A stretch of DNA of 64,000 bases. Source: Mobula hypostoma. Taxonomy: Eukaryota. Of the stretch, positions 323 to 62,311 are shown in pieces. The notes under the pieces are model-generated. The model did no database searches. It was not told the origin of the DNA and saw nothing but the letters and a program-made list of their open reading frames with translations. How positions within the stretch are numbered: the first letter of the stretch is position 1; every line of letters begins with the position of its first letter. The translations under genes and the position numbers were made by a program. The stretch is taken from positions 190,898,001 to 190,962,000 of the forward strand of contig NC_086101.1 of NCBI RefSeq assembly GCF_963921235.1, given 5' to 3'.

Positions 323-2165
323 TTTCTGCCCCTCAATCAACCAATCACCTCAGACTCCTGACTCACCCCTCCTCAGTCTGCCAATGACTTCAAATCCTGT
401 CTCACCCCTACTCAATTCATGAATCACATGAGTCTCCTGTCTCACCCCTCCACAATCCATCAATCAACTGAGACTCCAGTCATACTCCTCCTCGATCCAT
501 CAATCACCCCATACTCATCTCACTCCTGCTCAATCCCGCAAGCAACTCAGACTCATGTCGCATCCTCAATTCAACAAACACTTAATACTGCTGCCTAAGC
601 CCTCCTCAAACTATCAATCGCTTCAGATTCTTGTCTCACCTCTCCTCAATCCATCCATCAACTGAGACAACAGTAAGACCCCTCCTCAATCCATCAACAA
701 AATCAGACTCCTTTCTCACCCCTCCTCAATACATCAAACACCTCACACTCTGTCTGACCACTCCTCAGTACAGGAATCACATCAGACTCATCTCACAAGT
801 CCACAATCCATAAAAAAAAACTTTAGAAATATGTCTCATCCCCTCCTCAATCTATCAGTCACCTCAGACTCTTCTCACTCTCCTCCTCAATCGATCAATT
901 ACTTCAGACTCCTGTCTCACTCCTCCACAATCGCTCAATTACGTCAGACTCCTGTCTCACCTCTCCTCAATCCTTTAGTCATCACAGATGCTTCTCGCAG
1001 CTTCTCATTCCGTCAATCACCCAAGTCTCACTCATCGTCAATCCACCAATCATCCCAGACTCCTGTCTCAACCTTTCTCAATCCATCAATCAACCGAGAC
1101 TAATGTCTTAGCACTCCTCTATCCATCAATCACCTCAGACACATCTCACCCCTCCTCAAACCATCAATCTCCTCAGACTCCTCTCTCACCCCTCTTCAAA
1201 CCATCAATCACCTCATACTCCTGTGTCAACGTTCTCAATGCATCAATAACTTCAGACTCCTGTCTTCCTGCTTCTCAGTACACCAATCACCTCAGACTCC
1301 TAGCTCACCCCTCCTCAGTCTACCAATGACTTCAAATCCTGTCTCACCCCTCCATAATCCATCAATCAGCTGAGACTCCAGTCAGACCCCTCCTCAATCC
1401 ATCAATCACCTCATACTCGTCTCACTCCTCCTCAATCCTTCAATCATCTCAGACTCATGTCGCATCCTCAATTCATCAATCACTTAATACTCTGGCCTCA
1501 GCCCTCCTCAACTATCAATCACTTCAGATTCTTGACTCACCCCTCCTCAATCCATCAATCACCTCAGACTAGTCTCACTGCTCATCAATCCATCAATCAC
1601 CTCAGAGTCCGGTCGCGTATCTCCTCAATTCTTCAGCCACCTGAGATCACTGCCTCTCCTCTCCGCTATCGATCAATCGCCTCAGACTCCTGTCTTTCCC
1701 CTCCTCAATCCAAGAGTCACTTCAGACTTCTCTCTCACTCCTCAGCAATCCATCAATAAACTCAGACTCCTTTATCATCCCTCCCCAATCCTTCAGTCAC
1801 CTCAGTCCCCTGTCTCCCCTCTCTTCAATCCATCTATCACCTCAGAATCCAGTCTCACTCCTCCTCAATCCATGAATCAGCTCAGACTCCTGACTCTACC
1901 CTCCTCAATCCATCTATCTATTCACACTACTGTCTCAACCCTCCTCAATCCATCAATCACTGACTCATTTTTCACCCCTCCTTAATTTTTCAATCATATC
2001 ACTCCTGTCTTATCCCTCCTCAATCTACCATCACCTCAGACTCCTGCGTCTCCCCTGCTCAATCCATCAATCACATCAGACTCCAGTCTCACGGCTGCTC
2101 AATCCGCCAATCCCCTCAGACTGCTCTTTCCTTTTCCTCTGGCTATTCAGCAGTCCTCTATCAGT
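323..2165. repeat. 40-bp minisatellite array (consensus CAGACTCCTGTCTCACCCCTCCTCAATCCATCAATCACCT) in intron 1 of Siglec-15-like gene 1
   Basis: Exact 40-nt periodicity is visible (e.g. 1801-1920); G-poor + strand; it generates the spurious S/P/H/Q-rich ORFs. Confidence 0.95.
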
Positions 2166-2235
2166 CCCGATGCAAACCAAAACTTCAGTGTTCTTTTACC
2201 CCCACAGATGCAGATTGTTTGTTGTTCAATTATCG

Positions 2236-2486
2236 ACCACTGTTTATTCTCTCTTTCTCTCTCTCTCTCCCTTGCTCTCCCTCTTGCCTTCTCCCCCTCC
2301 CCCTCCCCTGTCCCTCTCTCCCTCCCTCTCCCCTCTCCCTCCCTCCCTCTCTACCCCTCCTTCTCTCTCCTCTCTCCGCTCTCTTCCCCTCTCTCTCGCT
2401 CCCTCTCACTCTCCCTCTCTCCCCCTCTCTCGCACTCACTCACTCAATCTCTGTCTCACTCACCCCCAGTATCTTTCTCTCTCTGC
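2236..2486 (+). repeat. Compound (CT)n/C-rich microsatellite forming an extended polypyrimidine tract before the V1 acceptor
   Basis: About 250 nt of almost pure C/T ending in CTGCAG (AG at 2487-2488). Confidence 0.9.
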
Positions 2487-2488
2487 AG

Positions 2489-2872
2489 ACTGGTCAATCT
2501 ATGGTTTGTCAATGTCCGGCGCTGATGTGGTCTCTGCGGTGGAAGGGAACTCCGCTGTGCTACCGTGTACTTTCACCTACCTACCCAGAAACCTCGTCCC
2601 TTCCGGCACCGTGATCTGGTACTGGGAGAAACCAGGTGCGAGAAACCCGGTATTTCACTGCACATATCCCGTTTCCGGCCGCTCCGGGTGCGGTACAACA
2701 ACACTGAAGACTGGAGGAGGGCGGTTCGGATTCGTGGGGAACCTCAGTCAGAGAGATGCCTCGATAATGGTGCAGCGTCTGAACCGGAGTGACGGTGGTC
2801 GGTATCAGTGCCGGGTGGAGCTCAATGTTGGTAACATTCAAACGGCGGTTCTAACAGCGCTGTCTGTGAGAG
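2489..2872 (+). CDS. siglec15l: Exon: Siglec-15-like N-terminal V-set Ig domain (V1), gene 1
   Basis: Acceptor AG 2487-88, donor GTGAGG 2873, 384 nt, phase 1-1, open. Translation DWSIYGLSMSGADVVSAVEGNSAVLPCTF..VIWY..PVFHC..GC..GRFGFVGNLSQRDASIMVQRLNRSDGGRYQCRVE matches the Siglec-15 pattern as I recall it (AVLPCTF, VFRC/LC extra Cys pair, RFRLLGN, YFCRVE). F-strand Arg is CGG 2812-2814. Confidence 0.9.
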
Positions 2873-3180
2873 GTGAGGACGATGTTCAAACATTATTTAC
2901 AACTACGTTTTGCAGGATAATCATGTCAAATTGCACGTGATTGTCATGTGCACATCACATAGAACACTTCAGCCCACAATGTTGTGCTGGCCCTTAAATC
3001 TGGTCCAAAATCAATCTAACCCTTGCCTCCCACACACCCCTCCATTTCTATAACATCCGTCTCAGAGTCTCTCTCTCTCTTGCTCTTTCACTCTCTCGCG
3101 CGCGCGTGCGCGCGTTCTCTCTGTTTCTCCTTCTGATTCTCAGTCTGTCTCTCTCTCTGTCTCTCTCTGTCTCTGTCTTC

Positions 3181-3855
3181 AAATTTGACCTACCGAAATG
3201 AACCACTTAACACTTATCTGGGTTAAAGTCCATCTGCCACTTCTCAGCCCAGTTCTGCATCCTATCGATGCTCCGCTGTAACCTCTGACAGACCTCCAGA
3301 CTATCCACAACACCTCCCAATGTTGTGACTTCAGCACAAACCGACGCTTCTACTTCCTCCTCCGGGTCATTTGTAAAAATCACAAAGAGGAGGGGTTCCA
3401 GTACAGATCCCGACGGACCACCACTGGTCACCGACCTGCTTGCAGAACACTCTTAGTCTGACCTCTACCCTTTGACCTGTTAGACATGGGCGATTGTCAC
3501 AAATGTACTTAAATGTGCCTGCCTCTACCACATACTCGGCGAGGTGTTCTACACACCCACCATTCTCTGTGTAATGAACCTGCCTCTGACATCCTCCCTA
3601 TACTTTCCTCCAATCACCTGAAAATTATGCCCCTTTATACTAGTCATTTCTACACCAGGAAAATTCTCTGGCTGTATGCTCGATTATGCCTCTTATCAAC
3701 TTGTTCACCTCTATCAGGTCACCTCTCATCTTTCTTCACTCCCAAGAGGAAGTTTCCAGCTCGCTCAACCTTTCCTCATTAAACCTGCTCTCTGGTCCAG
3801 GCAGCGTCCTGGTAGATCTCCTCTGCATCCTCTCTAAAGCTTCCTCATCCTTCCT
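3181..3855 (-). mobile_element. Decayed CR1 LINE RT/3' fragment, shared with the copy-2 intron (49340-50010)
   Basis: ORF 3207-3431: GSVLEPLLFVIF..KWQMDFNPDKC. Confidence 0.8.
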
Positions 3856-5094
3856 ATAAAGACCTGAGCGGCACTGAACTTATTGCTGCTGCAGGTACGA
3901 TTTTCACTGCACGTCTGCCGACGTGTCTGCACAGGTGCAGTGAAACTCTAGTTGCCGCAGCAACACAGGTACAGAGCGTCGCATCAGAAAAGCTGCAATC
4001 AAGTTCAAGTTTATTGTCATCTGACTGTACACATATATAGAGCCAAACGAAACCACCTTCTTCCGGATCAATTTGTTGGACACTTTCAATACAGCGAATA
4101 TTATGCCGCAAAGTGTTCACTGTAGAATTCCCTGTCAAACACACCAGCTCAGGCTGTTGAACACTTTCAGTACGGTCAGTATTACACTGGAGAGGGTGCA
4201 GAGTAGATTCAAATCAAGTTCAAGTTTAATGTCATCTGACTGCATATATCCACAACCAAATGAAGCAATGTTCCTCTGGACCACGGTGAACCAACACAAC
4301 ATACGTGTCACACAGCTCATAAAACAAAATATTTTCACAAGTATGTTGATAACATGTCGTTTAAAGTGTATGGAGTGTGCAGCAGAGCTACAGAGTAAAC
4401 AGGGAGCAGAATGCTATCTTAGTGAGGAGAACAAAGAGGTGCAAATGCATTTATTAGTCTCATTCATGAATTAAAATTAAAAATGAATTATTACATGAAT
4501 CTTTACATTTTTACAAGTGAAAAACACAATTATACCAAATGAAAAATAAAATCCACTTTAATGCAGTTGAAACAATTTAATACAGTGTCGATACACTGTA
4601 GTGCTACACCGTACTGACGAGTACTGTTACACTGTAGTGACTAGTGTTGTTTTACTGCACAGATCAGTGTTGTTGCACTGAATTGATTAGTGTTGTTACA
4701 GTGTACTTGCTTATGCTGCTACACTGTAATGGCTGGTGTTACACTGTACTGATTGGTGTTGTTATACTGTGCTGATGAGTGTTGTTACACTGTCCTGATC
4801 AATGTTGGTGTCAATTGGTTGAACAACTGAATGGTTGAAGGGAATTAGCTGTTCCTGAACGTGGTGGTATGAGATTTAGGCTTCTCTACCTCCTGCCCGA
4901 TGGGACTGTTTTATGTTCGAAAGAGTTTCTCTTGTTGGAATGGTTTGCAATTAGTCAGACACATGTGGGGGTGTTTTCATTTGGGAGGGTGCTGTGGGAA
5001 GTTTTTATTATTTTATAGGCTGGAAATTTTGTCATTGTTTAAACATGTTTGGTGGTGGTTAACTGATTTATTCTGGCACCTGTCCTTCCCTCAG

Positions 5095-5484
5095 CTCCCG
5101 GCGAGAGTGTCTCTGTGATGACTGGAACCGAGGGAGCTTCGGCCACGTTACCCTGTGAGTTCACACGGCCTCCGCAGAGCCTTACCGCACACAGGGTGAC
5201 GTGGATGAGGAAGGATCCCTACCGACACATCGTCACATTCAGGCGTTATGAAAATGGATTGTGGGCAGCGGAAAACAGAGCGACTTGGTACGAGCTCGTC
5301 GGGGACCCAGAGCGGGGAAACGTCTTGATCAGGATAAAGCAGCTGAGTGTGGAGGACAGTCACAGCTACCTGTGTCTGGCTGAGTTCAGGAAAATGAACC
5401 ATGATTATTCATTCGACAGAGACCACGTCAAACCCCCACTTATCCATGTGTTCCAGAGTGAGATCCAGCTGCAGGTCAGACCAG
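5095..5484 (+). CDS. Exon: second V-set Ig domain, copy V2a (intact)
   Basis: TGTCCTTCCCTCAG acceptor, GTAAGA donor, 390 nt, phase 1-1. SATLPCEF..VTWMRK..YELVGDP..GNVLIRIKQLSVEDSHSYLC has the canonical Cys-Trp-Cys and D-x-x-x-Y-x-C motif. Confidence 0.9.
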
Positions 5485-7044
5485 GTAAGAAACAATTGAC
5501 CCATTCTGGAGGGTACGCGGAGGATGTAAGAGGGAGCAGGAATGGGAAGACGCATCTCACGATGTTCCGGTGGCTGTAGCCTCGCCGCAGTGGGATCAGC
5601 TTTAGCTCCATCTGCCTGGGGGCCGTGGGGTGTAGGAATCTCGGCTGTCACACCACACGGAGGGTGGGGTGTGTGGAGAAGCGGGCAGGTGAATGGGGTA
5701 GACGGTGTAGAGAAAGATTGAATAGAATACAGAGAAGATGAGAGAATCGGCTGGAAAATGGTAGAACAGAAATAAATTACCATTTGTTTTATTTAATAAT
5801 AGAGTAAAGATCCCTCACTAGAGTTATGAAAGCGATTGTCAAATATTCATCTGGGATAATATGGAAAAGCAGAGAATATCGGTGGGTACACGGTAAACAT
5901 AAAGGACAATGATATGTAATTTTCTTCTAAAAATAAGAGAGTGTTTGAATACTTGAGTAAAGATATTACACGACAATCATTTATGTATTATATACGTTAT
6001 ACACACCCAGAGACGGTTGTCGAGTACGTCTCATGGAATGAAGGGGTTAACGTATGAACATCGTTTGATGGCTCCGGGATAGTACTCGCGGAGTTCAGAA
6101 GAATGGGCGGGGGGTGATCTGGTTGAAACTGATCGAACATTGAAAGGCCGAGAAAGAGTGGATGTAGAGAGGATTTATATGGTGGTGGAGTCTAGTACCG
6201 GAGAGCACAGCCTCAGGATAGAGCAAGGTTCATTTAGAACGGAGATGGGGAGGAATTTCTTTAGCCAGAGAGTGGTGAATATATGGAATTCGTTGCCACA
6301 GACGACTGTGAAGGTCAAGTCTTTGTCTTTACAGTGGACTCGATGCTATCTTAGTGAGGAGAACTCAGAGGTGGAAATGCATTTACTAGTCTCACTCATT
6401 AATTAAATTTAAAAATGAATTATTAATGTATCTTTACATGTTTTTTTTTGCAAGAAAAACACAATTATACCAAAGGAAAAACAAAATCCACTATAATGCA
6501 GTTGATACACTTTAATACAGTGTTGATACACTGTAATGCTACACTGTACCGACAGTGCTGTTACAGTGTAGTGACTAGTGTTGTTATACTGTAATGAATA
6601 GTGTTGTTATGCTACAGTGATTAGTGTTGCTTCACTGTACAGTGTTGTTACAGTGCACTTATTTGTGCTGTTACACTGTAATGGCTGGTGTTACACTGTA
6701 CCGTTGGTGTTGTTATACGGTACTGATGAGTGTTGTTACACTCTCTTGATTAGTGTTGGTGGTAATTGGTTCAACAACTGAATGGTTGAAGGGAATCAGC
6801 TGTTCCTGAACGTGATGGTGTGAGATTTAGGCTTCTCTACCTCCTGCCCGATGGGACTGTTTTGTGTTCGAAAGAGTTTGTCTTGTTGGAATGGTTTGCA
6901 ATTAGTCAGACATATGTGGGGGTGTTTTCATTTGGGAGGGTGCTGCGGGGAGTTTTTATTATTTTTCAGGCTGGGAATTTTGTCAGTGTTAAACATGTTT
7001 GGTGGTGGTTAACTGATTTATTCTGGCACCTGTCCTTCCCTCAG

Positions 7045-7434
7045 CTCCCGTCGAGAGTGTCTCTGTGATGACTGGAACCGAGGGAGCTTCGGCCACATTA
7101 CCCTATGAGTTCACACGGCCTCCGCAGAACCTCACCGCACACACGGTGACGTGGAGGAGGAAGGATCCCTACCGACACATCGTCACATTCATGCGTTATG
7201 AAAATGGATCGTGGGCAGCGGAAAACGGAGTGACTCGGTACGAGCTCGTCAGGGACCCAGAGCGGGGAAACGCCTCGATCAGGATAAAGCAGCTGAGTGT
7301 GGAGGACAGTCACAGCTACCTGTGTCTGGCTGAGTTCAGGAAAAGGAAACATGATTATTCATCCGACAGAGGCCATGTCACACCCCCATTTATCCATGTG
7401 TTCCAGAGTGAGATCCAGCTGCAGGTCAGACCAG
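7045..7434 (+). CDS. Exon: second V-set Ig domain, copy V2b (open frame, B-strand Cys->Tyr)
   Basis: Same splice sites, 390 nt, phase 1-1; TAT replaces TGT (LPYEF). Confidence 0.8.
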
Positions 7435-9005
7435 GTAAGAAACCATTGACATATTCTGGAGGGTACGGGGAGCATGTAAGAGGGAGGAAGGGAGCAGGAA
7501 TGTGAAGACGCATCTCACGACGTTCCGGTGGCTGTAGCCTCGCCGCTGCGGGGTCAGCTTTAGCTCCAGTTGCGTGGGGGCGGTGGGGGTGTAGGAACCT
7601 CGGCTGTCTCACCACACAGAGGGTGAGGTGTGTGGGGAAGCGGGCAGGTGAATGGGGTAGACGGTGTAGAGAAAGATTCAGTGGAATACAGAGAAGATGA
7701 GAGAATCGGCTGGAAAATGGCAGAACAGAAATACATTATTCTTTGTTTTATTTACTAATAGAGTAAAGATCCCTCACTAGAGTTATGAAAGGGATTATCA
7801 AATATTCATCTGGGATAATATGGAAAAGCAGAGAATATCGGTGGGTACACGGTAAACATAAAGGACAGTGATATGTAATTTTGTTTTAAAAATAAGAGAG
7901 TTTTTGAACGCTTGAGTAAAGATATTACACAACAATCATTTATGTATTATATACGTTATACACATCCAGAGACGGTTGTCGAGTACGTCTCATGGAATGA
8001 AAGGGTTAACGTATGAACATCGTTTGATGGCTCCGGGATAGTACTCACGGAGTTCAGAAGAATGGGAGGGGCATGATCTGGTTGAAACCTATCGAACATT
8101 GAAAGGCCGAGAAAGAGTGGATGCAGAGAGGATTTATATGGTGGTGGAGTCTAGTACCGGAGAGCCCAGGCTCAGGATAGATCAACGTCCCTTTGGAACA
8201 GAGATGGGGAGGAATTTCTTTAGCCAAAGGGTGGTGAATATGTGGAATTCGTTGCCACAGACGACTGTGAAGGTCAAGTCTTGGTCTTTACAGTGGACTC
8301 GATGCTATCTTATTGAGAAGAATTCAGAGGTGGAAATGCATTTATTAGTCTCACTCATTAATTAAATTTAAAAATGAATTATTAATGTATCTTTCCATGT
8401 TTTTTTTTTTGCAAGAAAAACACAATTATACCAAAGGAAAAAGAAAATCCACTATAATGCAGTTGATACATTTTAATGTAGTGTTGATACACTGTAGTGC
8501 TACAGTGTACCGACAGTGCTGTTACAGTGTAGTGACTAGTGTTGTTATACTGTAATGAATAGTGTTGTTATGCCGTAGTGATTAGTGATGTTTCACTGTA
8601 CAGTGTTGTCACACTGCAGTGATTAGTGTTGTTACAGTGCACTTATTTGTGCTGTTACACTGTAATGGTTGGTGTTACACTGTACCGTTGGTGTTGTTAT
8701 ACGGTACTGATTAGTGTTGGTGTCAATTGACTCAACAACTGAATGGTTGAAGGGAATTAACTGTTCCTGAACGTGGTGGTGTGAGATTTAGGCTTCTCTA
8801 CCTCCTGCCCGATCGGACTGTTTTATGTTCGAAAGAGTTTCTCTTGTTGGAATGGTTTCCAATTAGTCAGATACCTGTGGGGGTGTTTTCATTTGGAAGG
8901 GTGCTGTGGGAAGTTTTTATTATTTTGTCGGCTGGAAATTTTGTCAGTGTTAAACATGTTTGGTGGTGGTTAACTGATGTATTCTGTCACCTGTCCTTCC
9001 CTCAG

Positions 9006-9361
9006 CTCCCGGCGAGAGTGTCTCTGTGATGACTGGAACCGAGGGAGCTTCGGCCACGTTACCCTGTGAGTTCACACGGCCTCCGCAGAACCTCACCGCA
9101 CACACGGTGACGTGGATGAGGAAGGATCCCTACCGACACATCGTCACATTCAGGCGTTATGAAAATGGATCGTGGGCAGCGGAAATCGGAGTGACTCGAT
9201 ACGAGCTCGTCGGGGACCCAAAGCGGGGAAACACCTTGATCAGGATAAAGCAGCTGAGTGTGGAGGACAGTCACAGCTACCTGTGCCTGGCTGAGTTCAG
9301 GAAAAGGAAACATGATTATTTATCCAACAGAGGCCATGTCACGACGTTCCGGTGGCTGTAG
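9006..9361 (+). pseudogene. V2c exon copy with the 3' end and splice donor deleted; reads into TFRWL* (stop 9359-9361)
   Basis: Acceptor intact. At ~9342 the sequence jumps from the V2b equivalent of 7381 to 7519 (TCAC microhomology); a second deletion lies at ~9379. Confidence 0.85.
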
Positions 9362-9780
9362 CCTCGCCGCTGCGGGGTCGGTTGTCGAGTACGTCTCATG
9401 GAATGAAAGGGTTAACGTATGAACATCGTTTGATGGCTCGGGGATAGTACTCGCGGAGTTCAGAAGAATGGGAGGAGCGTGATCTGGTTGAAACCGATCT
9501 AACATTGAAAAGCCGAGAAGCTCCTAATCCTTATGATCTGTGGGCTTACCACAGGTTAAAACTTTTTGTTCAGAAGTTTAATTCTTGTCACTCTGATCTC
9601 TACATTCTTATTAATATCCTTTTTTAAATTCCTTCACACACGCTATCATCTGTAGCTTTTTCATTATAAATCTGATGAATTATAAATTCGTCTACGCACC
9701 TACAGATTTTAATCAGTCTACATTATTGGTCTCTGCCCCTCTGCCTGAGTCTGGATTGACCTCTCTCCCTTTCACTTCAG

Positions 9781-9880
9781 GGACAGACGCTTTTGCCGAG
9801 CTGATGTTGTGTATCCCACTCGGATTGAAAACTCTCGCCCTTTTAGTGATGGGCGCCGTTCTCTGTTGTGACAAACTCAG
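9781..9880 (+). CDS. siglec15l: Transmembrane exon with intramembrane lysine (Siglec-15/DAP12-coupling type)
   Basis: CTCTCTCCCTTTCACTTCAG acceptor, phase 1. (G)TDAFAELMLCIPLGLKTLALLVMGAVLCCDKL, Lys AAA at 9828-9830; LGLKTLALL resembles Siglec-15 LGFKALLLL (recalled). Donor AG|GTACTG at 9881, or read-through RYCT* to 9893. Confidence 0.8.
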
Positions 9881-10179
9881 GTACTGTACGTAATAATGCT
9901 GAAGGCTCTTGCCGTGACGTGACAGAAATCCGATTCACTGAGACAGTCGGTGGGTGTTGGGAATTGTCTCAAATAGTTGAGGCGTACTGCCAGTACTTGT
10001 CGGTTGCTGTTTGTGGGGGCACCGCAGAAAATACTCGTTGCACTCCTGCATCATAAGATGACTCCTGCAGAAGTGTTTGTAGGCTGTTTAGCGTTTTCAG
10101 ATTCCTTTCAGATTAAATGTACCCACCAGATACCTGCTGAATGATAGACAAATGTAAGGATGTGTAGAAGCAAATGAGA

Positions 10180-10305
10180 GAAAACCTGCAGATGCTGTAA
10201 ATTAAAGTAACACACACAAAATGCTGGAGGAACTCAGCAGGCCGGGCAGCATCTATGGAAAAAAGTACAGTCGCCGTTTCTTGCAGAGACCCTTCGGCAG
10301 GATGA
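10180..10305 (-). mobile_element. Short Penelope pLTR-derived element
   Basis: AATGCTGGAGGAACTCAGCAGGCCGGGCAGCATCT...GAGACCCTTC is similar to the ends of the Penelope arms at 51240-51330 and 53510-53600. Confidence 0.6.
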
Positions 10306-10339
10306 GAGGAAAGGGTTAGAGCATCTGGTGCCTTTTGTT

Positions 10340-10520
10340 AGAAAGTATGTACGCGCTTCCTATATGCGCGTCGGTTTCCTCCGGGTGCTCTGGCTTCCTC
10401 GCACGGTCCAAAAAATTCCGGTTATCAGATTAATTGATCATTGTAAACCGTGTTGTGATTAGGCTAGCATTACATCCATGAGTTGCTGGGTGTCACGACT
10501 CGGTGGACCGTTGTTTCTGT
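10340..10520 (+). mobile_element. V-SINE/HE1-like SINE remnant; related copies at ~16060-16260 and ~25560-25740
   Basis: GGTTTCCTCCGGGTGCTCTGGCTTCCTC..TCCAAA..TTAATTGATCATTGTAAA resembles the V-SINE core. Confidence 0.55.
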
Positions 10521-11089
10521 AAATAACAAAATGATAAGTAATAGATTGTGCTTAGAGAAGACTGATAGGCTGGCATAACATCGACGGCCGAAGGGTCTGC
10601 AGTGTGCTCTAATGGTCTATGTTCGAAATACGAATCTAATTTTGATGTGCACAAAAGGACACGCTGCAACAATGCGGGAAAGTCTTGACTCTCCCCATCC
10701 CACGTGCACTGGGATCAGGTACTGCAATCAACCCAGGATGAATATGGCCCCTTGGTCTACACAAAACTAGTCCATGAGGCGAATTCCCTCAGAGATTTAG
10801 CTCTTGACTGAATCCCTGCAGCCATCTTTCTTAAGAATAATTCAATTTAAATTGCTATTGTATCAACTTCAAACGTATTAACACTGAAAAATAATTCAAA
10901 TGATTTCCATGCCTCTTATATCATTGATAATCCGGTTCCTCCTTAAATTACAGCCCCGATCTGTTACTGACCCCAATATGTTGCACTTACTTAGCTCCTA
11001 TGATTTTTGTATCCACTTCCCTCTCTTCCGGATTCATCCTAAGAAATCTGATAATCAAATGCCTGTGTCCTAGAAATTGAGTCACAGCT

Positions 11090-11400
11090 AGGATTAACTT
11101 CACTCTGCCATACATAGAAGGATTTTCCTCTAGAACGCATATTCCGAGGAATTTCCTGAGCCAGAAGGTGGTGAGTCTGTGGAATTTATTGCCACAAACG
11201 GCTGTGGGAATACTGAAAACAGAGATTGATGGGTACTTGATTAGTAAGGGCGTCAAAGTTGACGGCGTAAGTACAGGAGAATAGGGTTTGGTAGGGATAA
11301 TAAATCAACCACGGTGGAATGCAGAACAGAATAGAAGGGCTGAATTCCGAAAGTCTGATGATATTTTATATGCTCTTATGGTCTTAATCTAAGTACCATA
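11090..11400 (+). mobile_element. Decayed CR1 3' fragment
   Basis: FLSQKVVSLWNLLP-like reading at ~11150-11200. Confidence 0.6.
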
Positions 11401-11693
11401 CTATTTTATCAATGTTATCCGGTAGCCTAAGACCATCTTCCTATCAACAACACGACCTATATTGTTATGTCACTGTAAAGTTTCCAATGGAATAACTGAA
11501 CAATTTTTGGGCTCATCTCCAGTTTTGTTGTCAAATACTGGTACGGACGATAAAATTTATCCTATGGGTAGTCCCATTCATGTCTCGATCCAAATCCCTT
11601 CAAAGGTTATAAGTGAATTGGGGAGAGGGAGTCGGATGTGCTGTCATTGTACAACGATCAATGCTCATGTTAACCGTTTTGTTCTGTCCACAG

Positions 11694-11709
11694 AAAGCGA
11701 CGAGACTGA
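11694..11709 (+). CDS. Candidate terminal coding exon giving a short basic cytoplasmic tail (R)KRRD*
   Basis: TTTTGTTCTGTCCACAG acceptor; phase 2 matches the TM exon end (AG+A=Arg) and gives stop-transfer-like RKRRD then TGA 11707-11709. Confidence 0.45.
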
Positions 11710-13019
11710 TCCACTGCAGGAGACTGGGAGGACCGGTTTTCCAAACACAAGGTGCAGCCGCCCCTCCGTGTGTGCTTCATCAGCTACCGCACTCTGGGTG
11801 CGGGCATTTCTGATCTGATTTCCAAATGGCTTTCCGATTTTCCCTTCTCTGCGTTTTATGGTTTCAGACCCGCTGACATTCAGAGTCTGCCTTGTCCTGT
11901 TGGAATTTTATACGCTTTTATGAGCTCCTGTTATTCCTCTCGATTCCAGTGACTATGGGGCCAACTGATTTAATCTCTCATCAGATAACAGTTCTGCTCC
12001 CTTTGGATCCTAGTAAACCTTGACTGATAAATCATCCCAACTCAGACAAATTCGAAACTGCACAAACTTCAGATAGGTTCTCTCTAAGGCCCTGTACAGC
12101 TACAGCGGCATCCTTTCTTCTGTTCTCAAATCAGCTTGCATTACGCCACCCTCAAAGATGGAGGTGTTGAAATTATTTCGCCCATCCAGTTCATTGTTGT
12201 TGACTTTGAGCAACTGGGCATAAATACAATTCCGTCCTTTAGTTACATCTTGCCACCTGGGAAAAGACCCGATTCCTCGTCCACTTTGTTAATAGAATCT
12301 GACATTTTAAATCCAAAGTTCTTTCAGTGGCGCGAATTGAACCCAACGGTTCATCACTGACTGGTTCTCTAAAGCGATGCCACAACCGCGACTCGACTAT
12401 GTCACCCGAAATTTAGGTTGAGCCTGGAGCAGGTTAGAAAGTTGGGTTAACATCGTGGGCCCACGGATCTCGAGCGAGCTGTGCTGTTTTATGTTCTGGA
12501 TCTTTTTGTGTGAAGGAAATTGGGTCATTCGGCAGCTGGTACCTGCTCTCCTCTCAAATACAAACATGCCTGATCATTTCCTGCAAATCCTGCATATTCC
12601 CGTTCTTTCCAAGATAATCAAAAATATATCGACCTTTGTCCTGAATAGTCTCAGCTGCTGGGCAAACATCCAACCGGATCGATTCGTTTGCAAGAATATG
12701 GCGAGTCCGTAGGCGCCCGATCGATCTCACGAGGATCACTTGGGCCTCATCGGCGCGGCTGGTACTTTCTTTTGGGAGTGGCTTTCGATTGTGCATGCGT
12801 TTCGTCACGCCAAACCGGGTTCGTCTCACCCGCACTATAAGTTACGCAGAGTGTATCCCAATTAACATCACTTAGTAAAAATGTTTAATCACACCACTGT
12901 CGTTCTTACTCTGCACATACTAGGGAACAACCACCGTCCAATTAATTGAAGAAATCCAACGGGAACACCATGTTCCACGTGAAGAAATGTTATCTGTCTT
13001 TCATTGTGTGTGTGTGTGT

Positions 13020-22829: not shown

Positions 22830-23960
22830 CATAGAAACATAGAAAATAGGTGCAGGAGTAGGCTATTCGGCCCTTCGAGCCTGCACCGCCACTTATTATG
22901 ATCATGGCTGATCATTCAACTCAGAACCCTGCACCAGCCTTCCCTCCATACCCCCTAATCCCCTTAGCCACAAGGGCCATATCTAACTCCCTCTTAAATA
23001 TAGCCAATGAACTGGCCTCAACTGTTTCCTGTGGCAGAGAATTCCACAGATTCACCACTCTCTGTGTGAAGGAGTTTTTCCAAATCTCGGTCCTAAAAGG
23101 CATCCCCTTTATCCTCAAACTGTGACCCCTCGTTCTGGACTTCCCCAACATCGGGAACAATCTTCCTGCATCTAGCCTGTCCAATCCCTTTAGGATTTTA
23201 TACGTTTCAATCAGATCCCCCGTCAATCTTCTAAATTCCAACGAGTACAAGCCCAGTTCATCCAGTCTTTCTTCATATAAAAGTCCTGCCATCCCAGGAA
23301 TCAATCTGGTGAACCTTCTTTCTACTCCCTCTACGGCAAGGATGTCTTTCCTCAGATTAGGGGACCAAAACTGCACACAATACTCCAGGTGTGGTCGCAC
23401 CAACGCCTTGTACAACTGCAGTAGTACCTCCCTGCTCCTATACTCGAATCCTCTCGCTATAAATGCCAGCATAGCATTCGCCTTTTTCACCGCCTGCTGT
23501 ACCTGCATGCCCACTTTCAATGACTGGTGTATAATGACACCCAGGTCTCGTTGCACCTCCCCTTTTCCTAATCGGCCACCATTCAGATAATAATCTGTTT
23601 TCTTATTTTTGCCACCAAAGTGGATAACTTCACATTTATCCACATTAAATTGCATCTGTCATGAATTTGCCCACTCACCTAACCTATCCAAGTCACCCTG
23701 CATACTCTTAGCATGCTCCTCAAAGCTAACACTGCCGCCCAGTTTCGTGTCATCCGCAAACTTGGAGATGCTGCATTTAATTCCTTCATCCAAGTCATTA
23801 ATATATATTGTAAACAACTGGGGTCCCAGCACTGAGCCTTGCGGTGCCCCACTCGTCATTGCCTGCCATTCTGAAAAGATCCCATTTATTCCCACTCTTT
23901 GCTTCCTGTCTGCCAACCAATTCTCTATCCACATCAATACCTTACCCCCAGTACCGTGTG
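22830..23960 (-). mobile_element. 5'-truncated CR1 LINE (RT C-terminal part, 3' UTR, tail)
   Basis: ORFs 23659-23988 ([22 protein letters not shown]) and 22921-23655; (CATAGAAA)n tail. Confidence 0.95.
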
Positions 23961-29234: not shown

Positions 29235-31761
29235 CATAGAAACATAGAAACATAGAAAATAGGTGCAGGAGTAGGCCATTCGGCCCTTCGAGCCTGCACC
29301 ACCGTTCAGTATGATCATGGCTGATCATCCAACTCAGAACCCTGCACCAGACTTCGCACCATACCCCCTGATGCCTTTAGCCACAAGGGCCATATCTAAC
29401 TCCCTCTCAAATATAGCCAATGAACTGGCCTCAACTGTTTCCTGCGGCAGAGAATTCCACAGATTCACCACGCTATGTGTGAAGAAGTTTTTCCTAATCT
29501 CGGTCCTAAAAGGCTTCCCCTTTATCCTCAAACTGTGACCCCTCCTTTTGGACTTCCCCAACATCGGGAACAATCTTCCTGCATCTAGCCTGTCCAGTCC
29601 CTTTAGAATTTTAAACGTTTCAATCAGATCCGCCCTCAATCTTCTAAATTCCGACGAGCATAAGCATAGTTCATCCAGTCTTTCATCATATGAAAGTCCT
29701 GCCGTCCCAGGAATCAATCTGGTGAACCTTCTTTGTACTTCCTCTATGGCAAGGATGTCTTTCCTCAGATTAGGGGACCAAAACTGCACACAGTACTCCA
29801 GGTGTGGTCTCACCAAGACCTTGTACAACTGCAGTAGTACCTCCCTGCTCCTGTACTCGAATCCTCTCGCTATAAATGCCAGCATACCATTTGCCTTTTT
29901 CAACGCCTGCTGTACCTGCATGCCCACTTTCAATGACTGGTGTATAATGACAACCAGCTCTCGTTGCACCTCCCCTTTTCCTAATCGGTCACCATTAAGA
30001 TAATAATCTGTTTTCCTGTTTTTGCCACCAAAGTGGATAACTTCACATTTATCCACATTAAATTGCATCTGCCATGAATTTGCCCACTCACCTAACCTAT
30101 CCAAGTCACCTGCATCCTCTTAGCATCCTCCTCACAGCTAACACTGCCGCCCAGCTTCGTGTCATCCGCAAACTTGGAGATGCTGCATTTAACTCCCTCA
30201 TCCAAGTCATTAATATATATTGTAAACAACTGGGGTCCCAGCACTGAGCCTTGCGGTACCCCACTAGTCACTGCCTGCCATTCTGAAAAGGTCCCGTTTA
30301 TTCCCACTCTTTGCTTCCTGTCTGCCAACCAATTCTCTATCCACATCAATACCTTACCCCCAATACCGTGTGCTTTAAGTTTGCACACTAATCTCCTGTG
30401 TGGGACCTTGTCAGAAGCCTTTTGAAAATCCAAATATACCACATCCACTGGTTCTCCCCTATCCACTCTACTAGTTACATCCTCAAAAAATTCTATGAGA
30501 TTCGTCAGACATGATTTTAATTTCACAAATCCATGCTGACTTTGTCCGATGATTTCACCGCTTTCCAAGTGTGCTGTTATCACATCTTTGATAACTGAAT
30601 CTAGCAGTTTCCCCACTACCGATGTTAGGCTAACCGGTCTATAGTTCCCTGGTTTCTCTCTCCCTCCTTTTTAAAAAGTGGGGTTACATTAGCCACCCTC
30701 CAATCCTCAGGAACTAGTCCAGAATCTACAGAGTTTTGAAAAATTATCACTAATGCATCCACTATTTCTTGGTCTACTTTCTTAAGCACTCTGGGATGCA
30801 GACCATCTGGCCCTGGGGATTTATCTGCCTTTAATCCCTTCAATTTACCTAACACCACTTCCCTACTAACATGTATTTCCCTCAGTTCCTCCATCTCACT
30901 GCACCCTCTATTCCCTACTATTTCCAGACGATTATTTATGTCCTCCTTAGTGAAGACAGAACCAAAGTAATTATTCAATTGGTCTGCCATGTCCTTGTTA
31001 CTAATAATCAATTCACCTATTTCTGTCTGTAGGGGACCTACATTTGTCTTAACCAATCTTTTTCTTTTCACATATCTATAAAAGCTTTTACAGTCAGTTT
31101 TTATGTTCCCTGCCAGTTTTCTCTCATAATCTTTTTGCCCCTTCCTAATTAAGCCCTTTGTCCTCCTCTGCTGAACTCTGAATTTCTCCCAGTCCTCAGG
31201 TGAGCCACTTTTTCTGACTAATTTGTAAGCTTCCTCTTTGGATTCGATAGTATCCCTAATTTCCCTTGTCAGCCACGGGTGCACTACCTTCCCTGATTTA
31301 TTCTTTTGCCAAACTGGGATGAACAATTGTTGTAGTTCATCCATGTGATCTTTAAATGCTTGCCATTGCATATCCACCTTCAACCCTTTAAGTGTCATTT
31401 GCCAGTCTATCTTAGCTAATTCACGTCTCATACCTTCAAAGTTACCCTTCTTTAAGTTCAGAACCTTCGTTTCTGAATTAACTATGTTACTCTCCATTTT
31501 AATGAAGAATTCCACCATATTATGGTCACTCTTACCCAAGGGGCCTCTCATGACAAGATTGCTAATTAACCCTTCCTCATTGCTCAAAACCCAGTCCAGA
31601 ATAGCCTGCTCTCTAGTTGGTTCCTCGACATGTTGGTTCAAAAAACCATCCTGCATACATTCCAAGAAATCCTCTTCCTCAGCACCTTTACCAATTTGGT
31701 TCACCCAGTCTACATGTAGATTGGAGTCACCCATTATAACTGCTGTTCCTTTATTGCACAC
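29235..31761 (-). mobile_element. CR1 LINE ORF2 (end of endonuclease, RT, C-terminus), frameshifted into three ORFs, with 3' tail
   Basis: ORFs 30625-31761, 30092-30616 (QHGF, YLDFQKA, QGSVLGP, FADD) and 29334-30104. Confidence 0.95.
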
Positions 31762-37285: not shown

Positions 37286-38612
37286 TGTAGGAACCCTCCT
37301 TGGGTACAGGACATAGGGCCGGGACTCATGAACCCCGCGGGGCAACGGTAAGTCGGCCTGACTTACCCCACGGAGGCGAGGACAAGACAACACAAGACAA
37401 GACCCCATCGCGGAGAAACGGCAAGATGGCCTGACTTACCCCACGGAGGCGAGGACAAGACAAGACAAACACCAAAGAACAACACAGTTCTTATCTAGCT
37501 CCAGTGATAGAACTAGATCGAGGTGAGGGCGAGGGCAACAGACGAGAGCTGGAGGCGAGAGGGGCAGAGAAGGGATTCAGACAGCGGGGTAGGACAGGAA
37601 TCACAGACCGCCAGGGATAGGACTTAACTAGGTACTCGGATGCCGTCAGGGAGAGGACTTGACTTGGTACTCGTATGCCGTCAGGGACAGGACTTGGTCT
37701 TGGGCGTGGTACTTGGATGCCCCCGGAGCCAGGACTTGGACTTGGACGTTGTAGTTGGATGCCGCCGGAGCCAGGACTTGGAGGTTGTACTTGGATGCCA
37801 CCGGAGCCAGGACTTGGACGTGGTACTTGGATGTTGCCAGGGACAGGACTTGACTTGGTACTCGGATGCCGCCAGTGCCAGGACTTGGACTTGGACGTGG
37901 TACTTGGATGCCGCCAGGGAAAGGACTTGGACTTGGACGTGGTACTTGGATGCCCCCGGAGCCAGGACTTGGACTTGGACGTGGTACTTGGATGCTGCCG
38001 GAGCCAGGACTTGGACGTGGTACTTGGATGCCGCCAGGGAAAGGACTTGGCTTGGTACTCGGATGCTGCCAGGGTCAGGACTTCACTTGGTACTCGGATG
38101 CTGCCAGGGCCAGGCCTTCACTTGGTACTCGGATGCTGCCAGGGCCAGGCCTTCACTTGGTACTCGGATGCCGCCAGGGCCAGGACTTGGACTTGGACGT
38201 GGTACTTGGATGCCGCCGGAGCCAGGACGTGGTACTTGGAACCTCCGCGTAGTGGCGAGCACTAGACTCGGCGCAGGAACAGTAGACAGCGGCTCCTGAT
38301 TGTCTCCGGTGGGTTTACTGACGGACCCACTTTGATGAGGAAACTTTGCAGGCTCGCTTCGGCGAGGTAACTGGACGGGGTTGCTCCGGTGAGGAAGGGC
38401 GAATTACCCGCACTCGCTTCGGCAGAGACTAGGCTTGCTCCGGTCAGATGACATCGGCACACCGTACCTTAGATGACTTTGCAGACGCTCCCGCGCCGAA
38501 CGGCTGAAAGCCGGAGACTATAAACTACCGGTTCAGCGAAGCGTTAATTGCTTCTAATCACCAAAGCCGAGGGACACGGGAAAACAGGAAATCAACGGTC
38601 CGGATCGTAACA
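37286..38612. mobile_element. LTR-like element with an internal degenerate tandem repeat (GGACTTGGACGTGGTACTTGGATGCCGCCAGGGA, ~37620-38240)
   Basis: TGTAGG...GTAACA ends; shares motifs with the 42169-43365 LTR (GGCAAGATGGCCTG.CTTACC..GGAGGCGAGG); no TSD found. Confidence 0.55.
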
Positions 38613-48458: not shown

Positions 48459-48841
48459 ACTGGTCAATCAATGGTTGGTCAATGTCCGGCGCTGATGTGG
48501 TCTCTGTGGTGGAAGGAGTCTCCGCTGTGTTACCGTGTACTTTCACCCACCCATCCCCTGACCTCGTCCCTTCCGGCACCTTAATCTGGTACAGGGAGAT
48601 ACCAGGTGATTAAAAAAACCGGTATTTCTCTGCACCTATCCCGGTTCCGGCCGCTCCGGGTGCGATACAACACTGAAGACTGGAGGAGGGCGGTTCGGAT
48701 TCGTGGGGAACCTCAGTCGGAGAGATGCCTCGATAATGGTGCAGCGTCTGAACCGGAGTGACGGTGGTCGGTATCGGTGCCGGGTGGAGCTCAATATTGG
48801 CAAATTTCAAACGGCGGTTCCAACAAATCTGTCTGTGAGAG
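48459..48841 (+). pseudogene. siglec15l: Siglec-15-like V1 exon, copy 2: in-frame stop and frameshift
   Basis: Splice sites intact (AG 48457-58, GTGAGG 48842); 383 nt = 384 +2 -3; TAA at 48611-13 with an 8-nt TAAAAAAA where copy 1 has 6 nt; WSMS Trp and YRCRVE Arg (48781-83) retained. Confidence 0.85.
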
Positions 48842-60451: not shown

Positions 60452-60512
60452 ATGCGTTCGCTCCGGGTTTGCCTCTGCACGATCCTGCTATCCATCTCAG
60501 TCCAGGGATACA
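60452..60512 (+). CDS. Signal-peptide (leader) exon of Siglec-15-like gene 3: MRSLRVCLCTILLSISVQGY
   Basis: ATG at 60452 in context GCGATGC, basic-hydrophobic-small residue pattern, consensus donor GTAAGT at 60513; phase 1 matches the V1 exon at 61928. Confidence 0.8.
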
Positions 60513-61890: not shown

Positions 61891-61927
61891 TCACTCGATC
61901 TCTCCGCCGGTCTCTCTCTCTCAGCAG

Positions 61928-62311
61928 ACAATTCGATCCGTGGTTGGTCAATGTCCGGCGCTGATGTGGTCTCTGCGGTGGAAGGGGCCTCAGCTGTGTT
62001 TCCGTGGACTTTCACCCACCCACCCACTGACGTCGCCCTGTTCGGTTCCGTGATCTGGTACAGGGTGGAATCAGGTGCTAAAAAGCTGGTGCTTAATTGC
62101 ACATTTCCCAGTTCCGGCCGCTCCGCGTGCGAAATAGCGACACAGGAGACTGGAGGAGGGCGGTTCGGATTCGTGGGGAACTTCATTCAGAGGGACATTT
62201 CGATAATGGTGCAGCGTCTGAACCGGAGTGACGGTGGTCGGTATTGGTGCCAGGTGGAGCTCAATACTAATAAATTTCGAACAGTGGTTCTAACGGAGCT
62301 CTCTGTGAGAG
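61928..62311 (+). CDS. siglec15l: Exon: Siglec-15-like V1 domain, gene 3 (open; B-strand Cys->Trp, F-strand Arg->Gln)
   Basis: AG 61926-27, GTGAGG 62312, 384 nt, phase 1-1; GWSMSGADVV..AVFPWTF (TGG 62005-07)..LNC..AC..YWCQVE (CAG 62251-53). Confidence 0.82.

What the first reader, a model, noticed from the sequence alone, without database searches (positions are those of the whole stretch)
2489..11709. Siglec-15-like receptor with a non-canonical V-V(xN)-TM(Lys) architecture
Seen: phase-compatible exons V1 (1-1), V2a/V2b (1-1), TM (1-2) and a candidate tail exon splice into one open frame. Known: mammalian and teleost Siglec-15 is V-set + C2-set + TM Lys, signalling through DAP12. Here V1 and the TM segment have Siglec-15 signatures (four-Cys V domain, CRVE Arg, LGxK TM), but the membrane-proximal domain is a second V-set domain and I see no C2 exon between 2873 and 9780. 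Inference: a lineage-specific, multi-V activating receptor family derived from Siglec-15 in a cartilaginous fish, possibly undescribed.
Basis: partly seen in the sequence, partly recalled or inferred. Interest (0 to 1): 0.85.

Follow-up and report, generated by a model that had tools for sequence, protein, structure and literature searches.

The report
Ray Siglec-15-like V-V activating receptor
This ray gene encodes a surface receptor related to Siglec-15, with a second V-type domain where the usual C2-type domain sits; it belongs to a large shark-and-ray family that sequence databases predict but that I found described in no paper.

Summary
On the + strand, V1 (2489-2872), V2a (5095-5484), V2b (7045-7434), a Lys-bearing TM exon (9781-9880) and a tail exon (11694-11709, RKRRD-stop) have AG/GT sites and compatible phases. 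V1+V2a+TM+tail aligns end to end with a Mobula birostris RefSeq model (86% identity) and gives the same residues at the three split codons.

V1 is clearly Siglec-15-like: 78 bits to human Siglec-15 against 44 for the next single domain, with all four Cys and the key Arg kept. V2 is a true V-set domain by Pfam, by its AlphaFold model and by Foldseek. I found no C2 exon in the window.

Refinements:
- The family occurs across sharks and rays, with Lys-TM (activating-type) and ITIM-tailed (inhibitory-type) members.
- V2 is not unique to it. A conserved elasmobranch "Siglec-15" is V-V-C2-TM(Lys), and its second V groups with V2 (100/98).
- This family therefore looks like a tandem offshoot that lost the C2 domain.
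- Of the three V2 exons, V2a is intact, V2b lacks the first Cys, and V2c is truncated.
- The leader exon lies outside the window.

Adaptor pairing and sialic-acid binding are inferred. The scan's only other notes here cover this same stretch.

The parts
2489..2872 (+). V1 exon, phase 1-1: Siglec-15-type V-set domain with four Cys and CRVE Arg
   Evidence: AG/GT sites. Pfam V-set E 9e-12. Best PDB match is human Siglec-15 7zoz, E 3.5e-14; family profile 78 bits. 79-82% identical to Mobula models.
4411..9519 (+). About 1.96-kb tandem unit repeated three times, each copy carrying one V2 exon; the third unit is shortened by deletions
   Evidence: Direct repeats with 1950-1961 nt spacing. Three-way alignment gives exon identity 94-96% and intron identity 90-95%.
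5095..5484 (+). V2a exon, phase 1-1: intact second V-set domain, with Leu in place of the sialic-acid Arg (CLAEF)
   Evidence: Pfam V-set E 1.7e-12. AlphaFold pLDDT 85 with C' and C'' strands. Foldseek top hits are all IgV domains. 93% identical to the V2 of Mobula birostris P0001.
7045..7434 (+). V2b exon, phase 1-1: open frame and good splice sites, but first canonical Cys is Tyr, and Met37 is Arg
   Evidence: RefSeq models with tandem V2-V2 and the same RP|AP junction exist in Hemitrygon (P0154, P0156).
9006..9341 (+). V2c: truncated V2 exon remnant, missing its last 54 nt and its donor
   Evidence: Two deletions relative to units 1 and 2. The frame runs into a stop at 9359-9361, and no GT in a compatible phase follows (read directly).
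9781..9880 (+). Stalk/transmembrane exon, phase 1-2, with intramembrane Lys (CIPLGLKTLALLVMGAVL)
   Evidence: AG/GT sites. 91-97% identical to the Mobula TM segments. P, K and L of the motif are invariant in the activating members. The motif resembles mammalian Siglec-15 ALGLKVLLLLGVL and lungfish ALGIKLLL.
11694..11709 (+). Start of the terminal exon: completes Arg, then KRRD and a TGA stop (5-residue tail)
   Evidence: The same RKRRD end occurs in Mobula, Hypanus and Hemitrygon models. The first AATAAA downstream is at 13961.
48459..48841 (+). V1 pseudo-exon with an in-frame TAA and a 2-bp insertion, inside a partial segmental copy (48006-50473) of 2100-4235
   Evidence: No V2 or TM exon follows it.
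60452..60512 (+). Leader (signal peptide) exon of a third family gene, MRSLRVCLCTILLSISVQGY plus one base
   Evidence: 91% identical to residues 1-33 of Mobula birostris P0017. GTAAGT donor.
61925..62311 (+). V1 exon of the third gene, with first Cys as Trp and Arg as Gln (WCQVEL); the rest of the gene lies beyond the window
   Evidence: 87% identical to P0017. Sequence; departures from conserved columns.

Best explanation
Window 2489-11709 holds all but the first exon of a type I membrane receptor gene. The gene belongs to an elasmobranch multigene family that branched from the Siglec-15 lineage.

The mature protein is V1, then V2 (one or two copies), then a short stalk, a TM helix with a central Lys, and a five-residue tail. 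V1 keeps the Siglec-15 fold signature: two disulfides and the strand-F Arg that salt-bridges sialic acid. It is therefore the likely ligand-binding head. V2 is a V-type spacer domain that never carries that Arg.

With no signalling tail of its own, the receptor most likely signals by pairing its intramembrane Lys with the Asp of an ITAM adaptor of the DAP12, DAP10 or FcR-gamma type, as Siglec-15 does. Family members with ITIM tails would give the opposing signal, making this a paired activating/inhibitory system.

The family most likely arose by tandem duplication of a V1-V2-C2-TM(Lys) Siglec-15-type gene followed by loss of the C2 exon. In this gene a 1.96-kb unit then triplicated the V2 exon. 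V2a is intact, V2b is spliceable but lacks its first Cys, and V2c is dead.

Shown: exon structure, open frame, homology, domain folds, and family distribution and architecture. Inferred: transcription, which V2 exons are included, ligand, adaptor, and the order of evolutionary events.
For: - Splice model: canonical sites and phases. The 296-aa product aligns end to end with Mobula birostris P0001 at 86% and gives Ala, Gly and Arg at the three split codons, as the relatives do.
- Family: V1-V2-TM(K) and V1-V2-TM-ITIM models occur in eight ray and skate genera and at least nine shark genera.
- V1: human Siglec-15 is the best PDB match for the single sequence (E 3.5e-14, against 4e-7 for sialoadhesin) and for the family profile (78 bits, against 44 for the next single domain).
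- V1 residues: the equivalents of C64, C95, C104, C142 and R143 are present (their roles are given in PMC10264397). Gene 1's V1 departs from none of the columns that are at least 90% conserved.
- V2: Pfam V-set. The AlphaFold model has pLDDT 85 and nine strands including C' and C''. The Foldseek top 50 are all IgV domains.
- No C2 exon was found in the window.
- TM: P, K and L are invariant in the activating members. The motif is similar to Siglec-15 of beaver and lungfish and to the conserved elasmobranch V-V-C2 protein.
- Origin: in the domain tree, V2 plus V2' separate from V1, V1' and bony-vertebrate Siglec-15 V at 100/98. The V-V-C2-TM(K) gene is conserved across sharks and rays with a nearly invariant TM.
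- V2-V2 precedent: RefSeq models in Hemitrygon and Heptranchias carry tandem V2 domains.
Against: - No transcript data were available for this genome. The relatives' models are automatic predictions whose RNA support I could not see.
- The leader exon is not in the window, so I cannot show the gene is complete.
- Gene 1 has Leu where its relatives and human Siglec-15 have the Trp (W44) that contacts the sialic-acid N-acetyl group.
- Sixteen of 40 sampled V1 domains lack the Arg, so sialic-acid binding is not a constant property of the family.
- The V2 copies differ at dN/dS 1.1-1.9, and their exons are barely better conserved than their introns. This shows no purifying selection between the copies.
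- V2's link to the Siglec-15 V domain is weak (46 bits, against 42 for TIM-1).
- The tree has no outgroup, so the order of gain and loss is an inference.
- I did not look for a DAP12-type adaptor in this ray.
Confidence: 0.8

Rival explanations
1. The locus is a decaying or incomplete copy, a pseudogene in the making, inside a fast birth-and-death cluster. The frames are still open only because the duplication is recent.
For: The leader exon is absent from the window. A dead partial copy (V1-psi) lies 46 kb downstream. V2c is truncated and V2b has lost a structural Cys. The V2 copies evolve at dN/dS of 1 or above. V1 has the W44-equivalent Trp changed to Leu.
Against: Five exons are open, with all ten splice signals canonical. 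V1 departs from no column that is at least 90% conserved, and V2a is 93% identical to a Mobula V2. The tail stop falls exactly where it does in relatives. The intron between leader and V1 may simply be longer than the 2.5 kb the window offers; the Mobula genes span 28-56 kb. Loss of the first Cys recurs in several RefSeq-modelled members.
Confidence: 0.12
2. V1 and the V2-TM exons belong to different genes, or V2 was captured from an unrelated IgV receptor family of the pIgR, CD300 or MDIR type. On this reading 'Siglec-15-like V-V' is a chimaera of annotation.
For: The V2 profile's best whole-chain PDB hits are pIgR (E 5e-17) and CD276. NCBI names some members 'polymeric immunoglobulin receptor-like'.
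Against: Those pIgR scores are sums over several domains of about 22 bits each. The best single domain is Siglec-15 V at 46 bits. V2 has only the two canonical Cys and lacks the extra C-C' Cys pair that I recall for pIgR/CD300-type domains (own knowledge, set against the sequence). About 100 models from many species join V1 to V2 in the same order. Phases and split codons fit. No leader exon lies between V1 and V2a.
Confidence: 0.04
3. This is the true one-to-one orthologue of vertebrate SIGLEC15, and its second domain is only a diverged C2 domain.
For: [quoted passage not shown] V1 and the TM segment are Siglec-15-like.
Against: V2 is V-set by Pfam, by model topology and by Foldseek. On the Siglec-15 chain it aligns to the V domain, not to d2. 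The family has many copies per genome and includes ITIM forms. A separate V-V-C2-TM(K) gene is far better conserved across elasmobranchs and is the better orthologue candidate.
Confidence: 0.04

Closest known systems
Siglec-15 of bony vertebrates (human Q6ZMC9, PDB 7zoz; also beaver, lungfish and gar predictions)
   Same: V1 is its nearest solved relative by a wide margin. It keeps both disulfides and the Arg after the strand-F Cys. Both have a TM helix with a central Lys in an LG(L/I)K motif and a short tail without signalling motifs.
   Different: There is no C2-set domain; a V-set domain that lacks the Arg takes its place. The family is multi-copy and has inhibitory twins. Gene 1 has Leu at the W44 position. 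Ligand and adaptor are untested.
[quoted passage not shown] Mobula hypostoma XP_062903800, P0217)
   Same: It has the same V1-type then V2-type domain order, and its V2' groups with this family's V2 at 100/98. Its TM is related (MLCLIPLIK against MLCIPLGLK) and its tail is short. Its gene number in Mobula hypostoma is close to those of the family members.
   Different: It keeps a C2/I-set domain before the membrane. It appears conserved roughly one per species, with a near-invariant TM. Its V1' has Leu, not Arg, after the Cys in Mobula. It shares only about 30% identity with the window's domains.
Paired CD33-related Siglecs (Siglec-5/14, Siglec-11/16) and other paired receptor families
   Same: Near-identical ectodomains sit either on a charged TM with a short tail or on an ITIM tail. 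The genes form tandem clusters with pseudogenes. The key Arg is lost repeatedly (the concept is from PMC4042635 and PMC5701461).
   Different: Those receptors are V plus C2 domains, arose independently in mammals, and their V domains are much more distant from V1 (CD33 37 bits against Siglec-15 78 bits).
Skate modular domain immune-type receptors (MDIR)
   Same: Both are multigene activating/inhibitory IgV receptor families of cartilaginous fish (PMC3031540).
   Different: MDIR domains are described as CD300/TREM/pIgR-like (PMC3031540). V1 is Siglec-15-like, and V2 lacks the extra Cys pair I recall for that type. I had no MDIR sequences, so no direct comparison was made.

Membership tests
Siglec-15 (canonical vertebrate SIGLEC15) | N-terminal V-set domain closest to the Siglec-15 V domain | tested here: met
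   PDB phmmer E 3.5e-14, against 4e-7 for the next hit. Profile 78 bits over the whole domain, against 44 bits for the next single domain.
Siglec-15 (canonical vertebrate SIGLEC15) | Two V-domain disulfides (C64-C142 and C95-C104 in human) | tested here: met
   All four Cys align in gene 1. They are present in 36-40 of 40 family V1 domains. The bonds are defined in PMC10264397.
Siglec-15 (canonical vertebrate SIGLEC15) | Essential strand-F Arg (R143) directly after the Cys | tested here: met
   Gene 1 reads YQCRVEL. Only 24 of 40 family V1 domains keep it; the window's third gene has Gln.
Siglec-15 (canonical vertebrate SIGLEC15) | Membrane-proximal C2-set Ig domain | tested here: not met
   The second domain is V-set. 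There is no C2-like exon in the window.
Siglec-15 (canonical vertebrate SIGLEC15) | Lys in the transmembrane helix and a short tail without ITIM | tested here: met
   The TM reads CIPLGLKTLALLVMGAVL and the tail RKRRD. The Lys is invariant in the activating members. The orthologue model has a helix at 282-312.
Siglec-15 (canonical vertebrate SIGLEC15) | Association with DAP12/DAP10 through the TM Lys | not testable with these tools
   This needs co-expression and co-precipitation. I did not search for ray adaptor genes.
Siglec-15 (canonical vertebrate SIGLEC15) | Sialic-acid binding that depends on the Arg | not testable with these tools
   This needs a glycan-binding assay. The W44-equivalent is Leu in gene 1.
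Siglec-15 (canonical vertebrate SIGLEC15) | One-to-one orthology or synteny with SIGLEC15 | tested here: inconclusive
   No flanking marker genes lie in the window, only repeats and family exons. DNA of the Mobula loci was not obtainable. A better-conserved V-V-C2-TM(K) candidate exists.
Elasmobranch V1-V2-TM receptor family (RefSeq predictions, unnamed) | Colinear leader-V1-V2-TM, with either Lys-TM and an RK..D tail or an ITIM tail | tested here: met
   End-to-end alignment at 86% to P0001 with identical junction residues. V1 and V2a sit inside the family clades next to the Mobula sequences. The leader exon was not seen.
pIgR / CD300 / MDIR-type IgV receptors | IgV domain with an extra C-C' Cys pair and closest similarity to pIgR/CD300 domains | tested here: not met
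   V2 has only two Cys. pIgR domains score about 22 bits each, against 46 bits for the Siglec-15 V domain. MDIR sequences themselves were not compared.

The most novel reading that the evidence does not exclude
Sharks and rays have their own large, fast-evolving system of paired activating and inhibitory receptors, built from the Siglec-15 lineage. It would be a counterpart to the CD33-related Siglecs that arose independently in mammals. In this system a V-V ectodomain replaced V-C2, and V-domain number varies through exon duplication. Together with the conserved V-V-C2-TM(Lys) gene and the multi-V Siglec-15 predictions of lungfish and gar, this would mean that ancestral jawed-vertebrate Siglec-15 was a multi-V receptor, and that the V-C2 form known from teleosts and mammals is a reduced one.
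Probability: 0.4. Interest if true: 0.65.

Novelty: new variant of a known kind. Interest (0 to 1): 0.5.

Why it matters
Siglec-15 is treated as a conserved, single-copy V-C2 receptor from fish to mammals, and it is a drug target in bone disease and cancer. Here its lineage has instead expanded in elasmobranchs into a clustered family with a different ectodomain plan (V-V, no C2), activating and inhibitory twins, frequent loss of the sialic-acid Arg, and exon-level changes in domain number. This gives a concrete, testable case of how paired innate receptors arose in the oldest living jawed vertebrates. It also bears on what the ancestral Siglec-15 looked like. The sequences already exist in RefSeq as automatic predictions, so the new part is recognising and describing the family, not discovering the sequences.

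Tried and rejected
- A scan of genome contigs with V1 found nothing. That collection holds only bacteria and archaea.
- DNA of the Mobula loci could not be fetched because the sample files were too large. I could therefore not check V2 exon number, neighbouring genes or synteny in relatives.
- The leader exon of gene 1 was sought in 1-2488 by tblastn with relatives' leaders and by blastn with the third gene's leader exon. Neither found it. That stretch is a 40-nt minisatellite and CT-rich repeat.
- The C2 domain of the V-V-C2 family matched Siglec-15 d2 only weakly (22% identity, pairwise E 3e-6), and its best PDB hits are generic I-set domains. It says nothing firm about orthology.
- A cryptic donor for V2c was looked for by eye. 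The three GT dinucleotides between the deletion point and the stop are all out of phase.
- Six literature searches found no description of this family: Siglec or Siglec-15 with cartilaginous, elasmobranch, shark, Chondrichthyes and 'Siglec-15-like', plus one for MDIR. A search for DAP12 in cartilaginous fish gave nothing usable. Angata et al. 2007 is not held.
- I considered and rejected the idea that V2 is a mis-called C2 domain, on the fold evidence.
Full report
**Observation.** The window is eukaryotic DNA (46% GC, no N), and earlier scan notes place it in a ray genome.

| Exon | Coordinates | Phase |
|---|---|---|
| V1 | 2489-2872 | 1-1 |
| V2a | 5095-5484 | 1-1 |
| V2b | 7045-7434 | 1-1 |
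| Stalk/TM | 9781-9880 | 1-2 |
| Terminal exon (coding part) | 11694-11709 | stop at 11707-11709 |

- All acceptors are AG and all donors are GT.
- Joined as V1+V2a+TM+tail, the exons give one open frame of 296 residues ending LRKRRD*. Adding V2b also stays in frame.
- The V2 exons lie in a 1.96-kb unit repeated three times in tandem over 4411-9519.
- The third unit has lost the last 54 nt of its exon, its donor and about 0.5 kb of intron through two deletions. V2c then runs into a stop with no in-phase GT, so it is a dead remnant.
- V2b has Tyr for the first canonical Cys (LPYEF) and Arg for a nearly invariant Met.
- The signal-peptide exon is not in the window. Positions 1-2488 are a retroposon tail, a 40-nt minisatellite and CT-rich repeat, and searches with relatives' leader sequences found nothing there.

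**Is it one gene?** A word-indexed search with V1 found 26 proteins, all from rays and skates: Mobula birostris, M. hypostoma, Hypanus sabinus, Hemitrygon akajei, Narcine bancroftii and Amblyraja radiata.
- These RefSeq models read leader-V1-V2-TM-tail in exactly the proposed order.
- The spliced window product aligns end to end with M. birostris P0001 at 86% and M. hypostoma P0003 at 86%.
- The residues made by the three split codons match the relatives: Ala in SVR-A-PGES, Gly in VRP-G-TDAF and Arg in KL-R-KRRD.
- The TGA after RKRRD falls where Mobula, Hypanus and Hemitrygon models also end.
- This is strong comparative support for the splice model. It is not transcript evidence for this genome.

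**What the domains are.**
- *V1* is V-set by Pfam. Its best solved relative is human Siglec-15, both as a single sequence (E 3.5e-14; next is sialoadhesin at 4e-7) and as a 40-sequence profile (78 bits across the whole domain; next single domains are Nav beta-2 at 44, CAR at 41 and CD33 at 37).
- The four Cys that form C64-C142 and C95-C104 in human Siglec-15, and the Arg (R143) that binds the sialic-acid carboxylate, are all present in gene 1.
- One contact residue differs. Where relatives read GWSMSG and human reads RW44SMQ, gene 1 reads GLSMSG.
- *V2* is also V-set by Pfam (E 1.7e-12). An AlphaFold model of V2a built on 45 family sequences has pLDDT 85 and nine strands including C' and C''. 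Its top 50 Foldseek matches in the PDB are all IgV domains, among them nectin-1 D1, CRIg, PD-1 and CAR D1.
- On the Siglec-15 chain, V2 aligns to the V domain and not to d2. Leu replaces the Arg (CLAEF). That Leu is nearly invariant across the family's V2 domains.
- The V2 profile's best single-domain hit is again the Siglec-15 V domain, but only narrowly (46 bits against 42 for TIM-1). The higher pIgR scores are sums over several weak domains.
- tblastn with mammalian Siglec-15 and with elasmobranch V-V-C2 proteins hits only the V exons. No C2 exon was overlooked in the window.
- The TM segment (CIPLGLKTLALLVMGAVL) carries a Lys that is invariant in all 26 aligned activating members. It resembles beaver Siglec-15 (ALGLKVLLLLGVL) and lungfish Siglec-15 (ALGIKLLL).

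**The family.**
- An exhaustive HMMER search with V2a and a profile search with 13 full-length members recovered about 100 predicted proteins.
- They come from batoids (adding Leucoraja, Rhinoraja and Pristis) and from sharks: Heptranchias, Heterodontus, Chiloscyllium, Hemiscyllium, Stegostoma, Rhincodon, Scyliorhinus, Mustelus and Pristiophorus.
- The only hits from outside elasmobranchs that carried a source name were mammalian Siglec-15 (E 9e-21).
- Scanning all of them with V1 and V2 HMMs shows V1-V2 as the dominant plan. It is followed either by the Lys-TM with a short tail or by a hydrophobic TM with a long tail carrying ITIM-like motifs such as TYASI and VIYAAV. The family therefore has the make-up of paired activating and inhibitory receptors.
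- Variants in the models include V1 alone, V1-V2-V2, V1-V2-V2-V2 and V1-V2-V1-V2. Hemitrygon P0154 joins two V2 domains through RP|AP, the junction that V2a to V2b would make here.
- Only 24 of 40 sampled V1 domains keep the Arg, and four of the 40 lack the first Cys.

**Origin of the second V domain.**
- Among the weaker V2a hits are proteins that NCBI names Siglec-15 but that read V1'-V2'-C2-TM(Lys)-short tail, such as M. hypostoma P0217.
- A search with P0217 found a counterpart of about 400 residues in most sampled sharks and rays. Their TM is almost invariant (NFIIGMLCLIPLIKFLLLLITGIILFIKIK). ITIM-tailed relatives were also found.
- In a maximum-likelihood tree of 55 V domains, this family's V2 and the V2' of the V-V-C2 proteins fall on one side of a 100/98 branch. 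On the other side are V1, V1' and the Siglec-15 V domains of beaver, an unnamed Siglec-15-like sequence (P0209), lungfish, gar and a newt. Each group holds together.
- The tree is unrooted. It does show that the V1/V2 distinction is older than the split between the two elasmobranch families.
- The simplest reading is that a V1-V2-C2-TM(Lys) gene of the Siglec-15 lineage was duplicated, and one daughter lost the C2 exon and then expanded.
- Close gene numbers in M. hypostoma (LOC134346377 for the V-V-C2 gene; 134346381, -82, -83 and -88 for family members) hint that the two are neighbours. I could not fetch the DNA to confirm this.

**State of the three V2 exons.**
- Between units, exon identity is 94-96% and intron identity 90-95%.
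- dN/dS between copies is 1.1-1.9, on small counts (3-4 synonymous against 11-19 non-synonymous changes).
- There is therefore no sign of purifying selection between the copies. That fits either decay of the spare copies or diversifying selection.
- V2a and V2b each depart from three well-conserved columns, but only V2b's changes include a structural Cys.
- V2a and V2b have the same acceptor and donor contexts, so both could be spliced in. Which are used cannot be decided without RNA data.

**Rest of the window.**
- A V1 pseudo-exon at 48459-48841 carries an in-frame TAA and a 2-bp insertion. It lies in a partial segmental copy (48006-50473) of 2100-4235 and has no V2 or TM exon after it.
- A third gene starts with a leader exon at 60452-60512 and a V1 exon at 61925-62311, then runs off the window. 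It is 87-91% identical to M. birostris P0017. Like P0017, it has Trp for the first Cys and Gln for the Arg.
- The interval 12-48 kb holds LINE reverse-transcriptase fragments and repeats, and no other recognisable host gene.

**Mechanism.**
- Shown: a type I membrane protein plan with a Siglec-15-type V head, a V-type second domain, a Lys-bearing TM and a five-residue tail.
- Inferred from what is established for Siglec-15 (PMC7226832, PMC10264397): V1 binds a sialylated ligand through its Arg, and the TM Lys recruits an ITAM adaptor that gives an activating signal. ITIM-tailed family members with similar ectodomains would oppose this signal.
- The Trp-to-Leu change in gene 1, and the frequent loss of the Arg across the family, caution that ligands may have drifted away from sialic acid.

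**Novelty.**
- Six full-text searches found no paper on this family. The one related elasmobranch family I know of, skate MDIR, is described as CD300/pIgR-like.
- The sequences are already public as automatic RefSeq predictions, mostly labelled 'uncharacterized protein'.
- I rate the finding a new variant of a known kind: a real family, recognisable from databases, apparently undescribed, and of moderate interest to comparative immunologists.
- The scan's only other notes here (s1-142625 and s1-144379) concern this same stretch.

Noticed in passing
window 48006-50473 (V1 pseudo-exon 48459-48841): A partial segmental copy of gene 1's V1 exon and the intron after it (80-90% identity). The V1 copy has an in-frame TAA and a 2-bp insertion, and no V2 or TM exon follows.
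   Followed up: yes
window 60452-60512 and 61925-62311: This is the start of a third family gene (leader and V1 exons), closest to Mobula birostris P0017. Its V1 has Trp for the first canonical Cys and Gln for the sialic-acid Arg. A tandem NAGNAG acceptor at 61923-61927 could give two N-termini.
   Followed up: partly
window 330-2150 and about 47233-48100: A long 40-nt-period minisatellite (units like CTCCTCAATCCATCAATCACCTCAGACTCCTGTCTCACCC) followed by CT-rich low complexity sits directly upstream of the V1 exons of gene 1 and of the pseudo-copy. It was evidently duplicated along with them.
   Followed up: partly
related proteins P0217, P0219, P0221, P0223-P0228, P0230 (no window coordinates): Sharks and rays share a well-conserved V-V-C2-TM(Lys) protein of about 400 aa with a nearly invariant TM (NFIIGMLCLIPLIKFLLLLITGIILFIKIK). 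NCBI calls it Siglec-15. In Mobula its V1' has Leu, not Arg, after the strand-F Cys. It seems the better candidate for the elasmobranch SIGLEC15 orthologue.
   Followed up: partly
related proteins P0059 (lungfish), P0062 (gar), P0038 (lungfish), P0076 (newt): Siglec-15-type V domains also occur in tandem in predicted proteins of non-teleost bony vertebrates: two copies in lungfish, gar and newt, and seven in one lungfish protein. All of these are of the V1 type. The two gar copies are nearly identical and may be an assembly artefact.
   Followed up: no
window 11694-11820: Mobula hypostoma P0014 reads through the position of the window's TGA (11707-11709) into a 39-residue tail that matches the window DNA downstream. 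The stop position in this terminal exon therefore varies among family members.
   Followed up: partly
window 22921-23655, 29334-31761, 50543-51382, 53583-54407, 55073-56372: These are LINE reverse-transcriptase ORF fragments on both strands. The shared C-terminal motif (FTQRVVNLWNSLPQETVEA) also occurs at 1-300, at about 11100-11300 and inside each 1.96-kb V2 repeat unit (6140-6406, 8099-8365).
   Followed up: no
window 37640-38299: A tandem repeat that stays open in several frames (units like GLGLGRGTWMPPEPG). It is most likely a minisatellite, not a gene.
   Followed up: no
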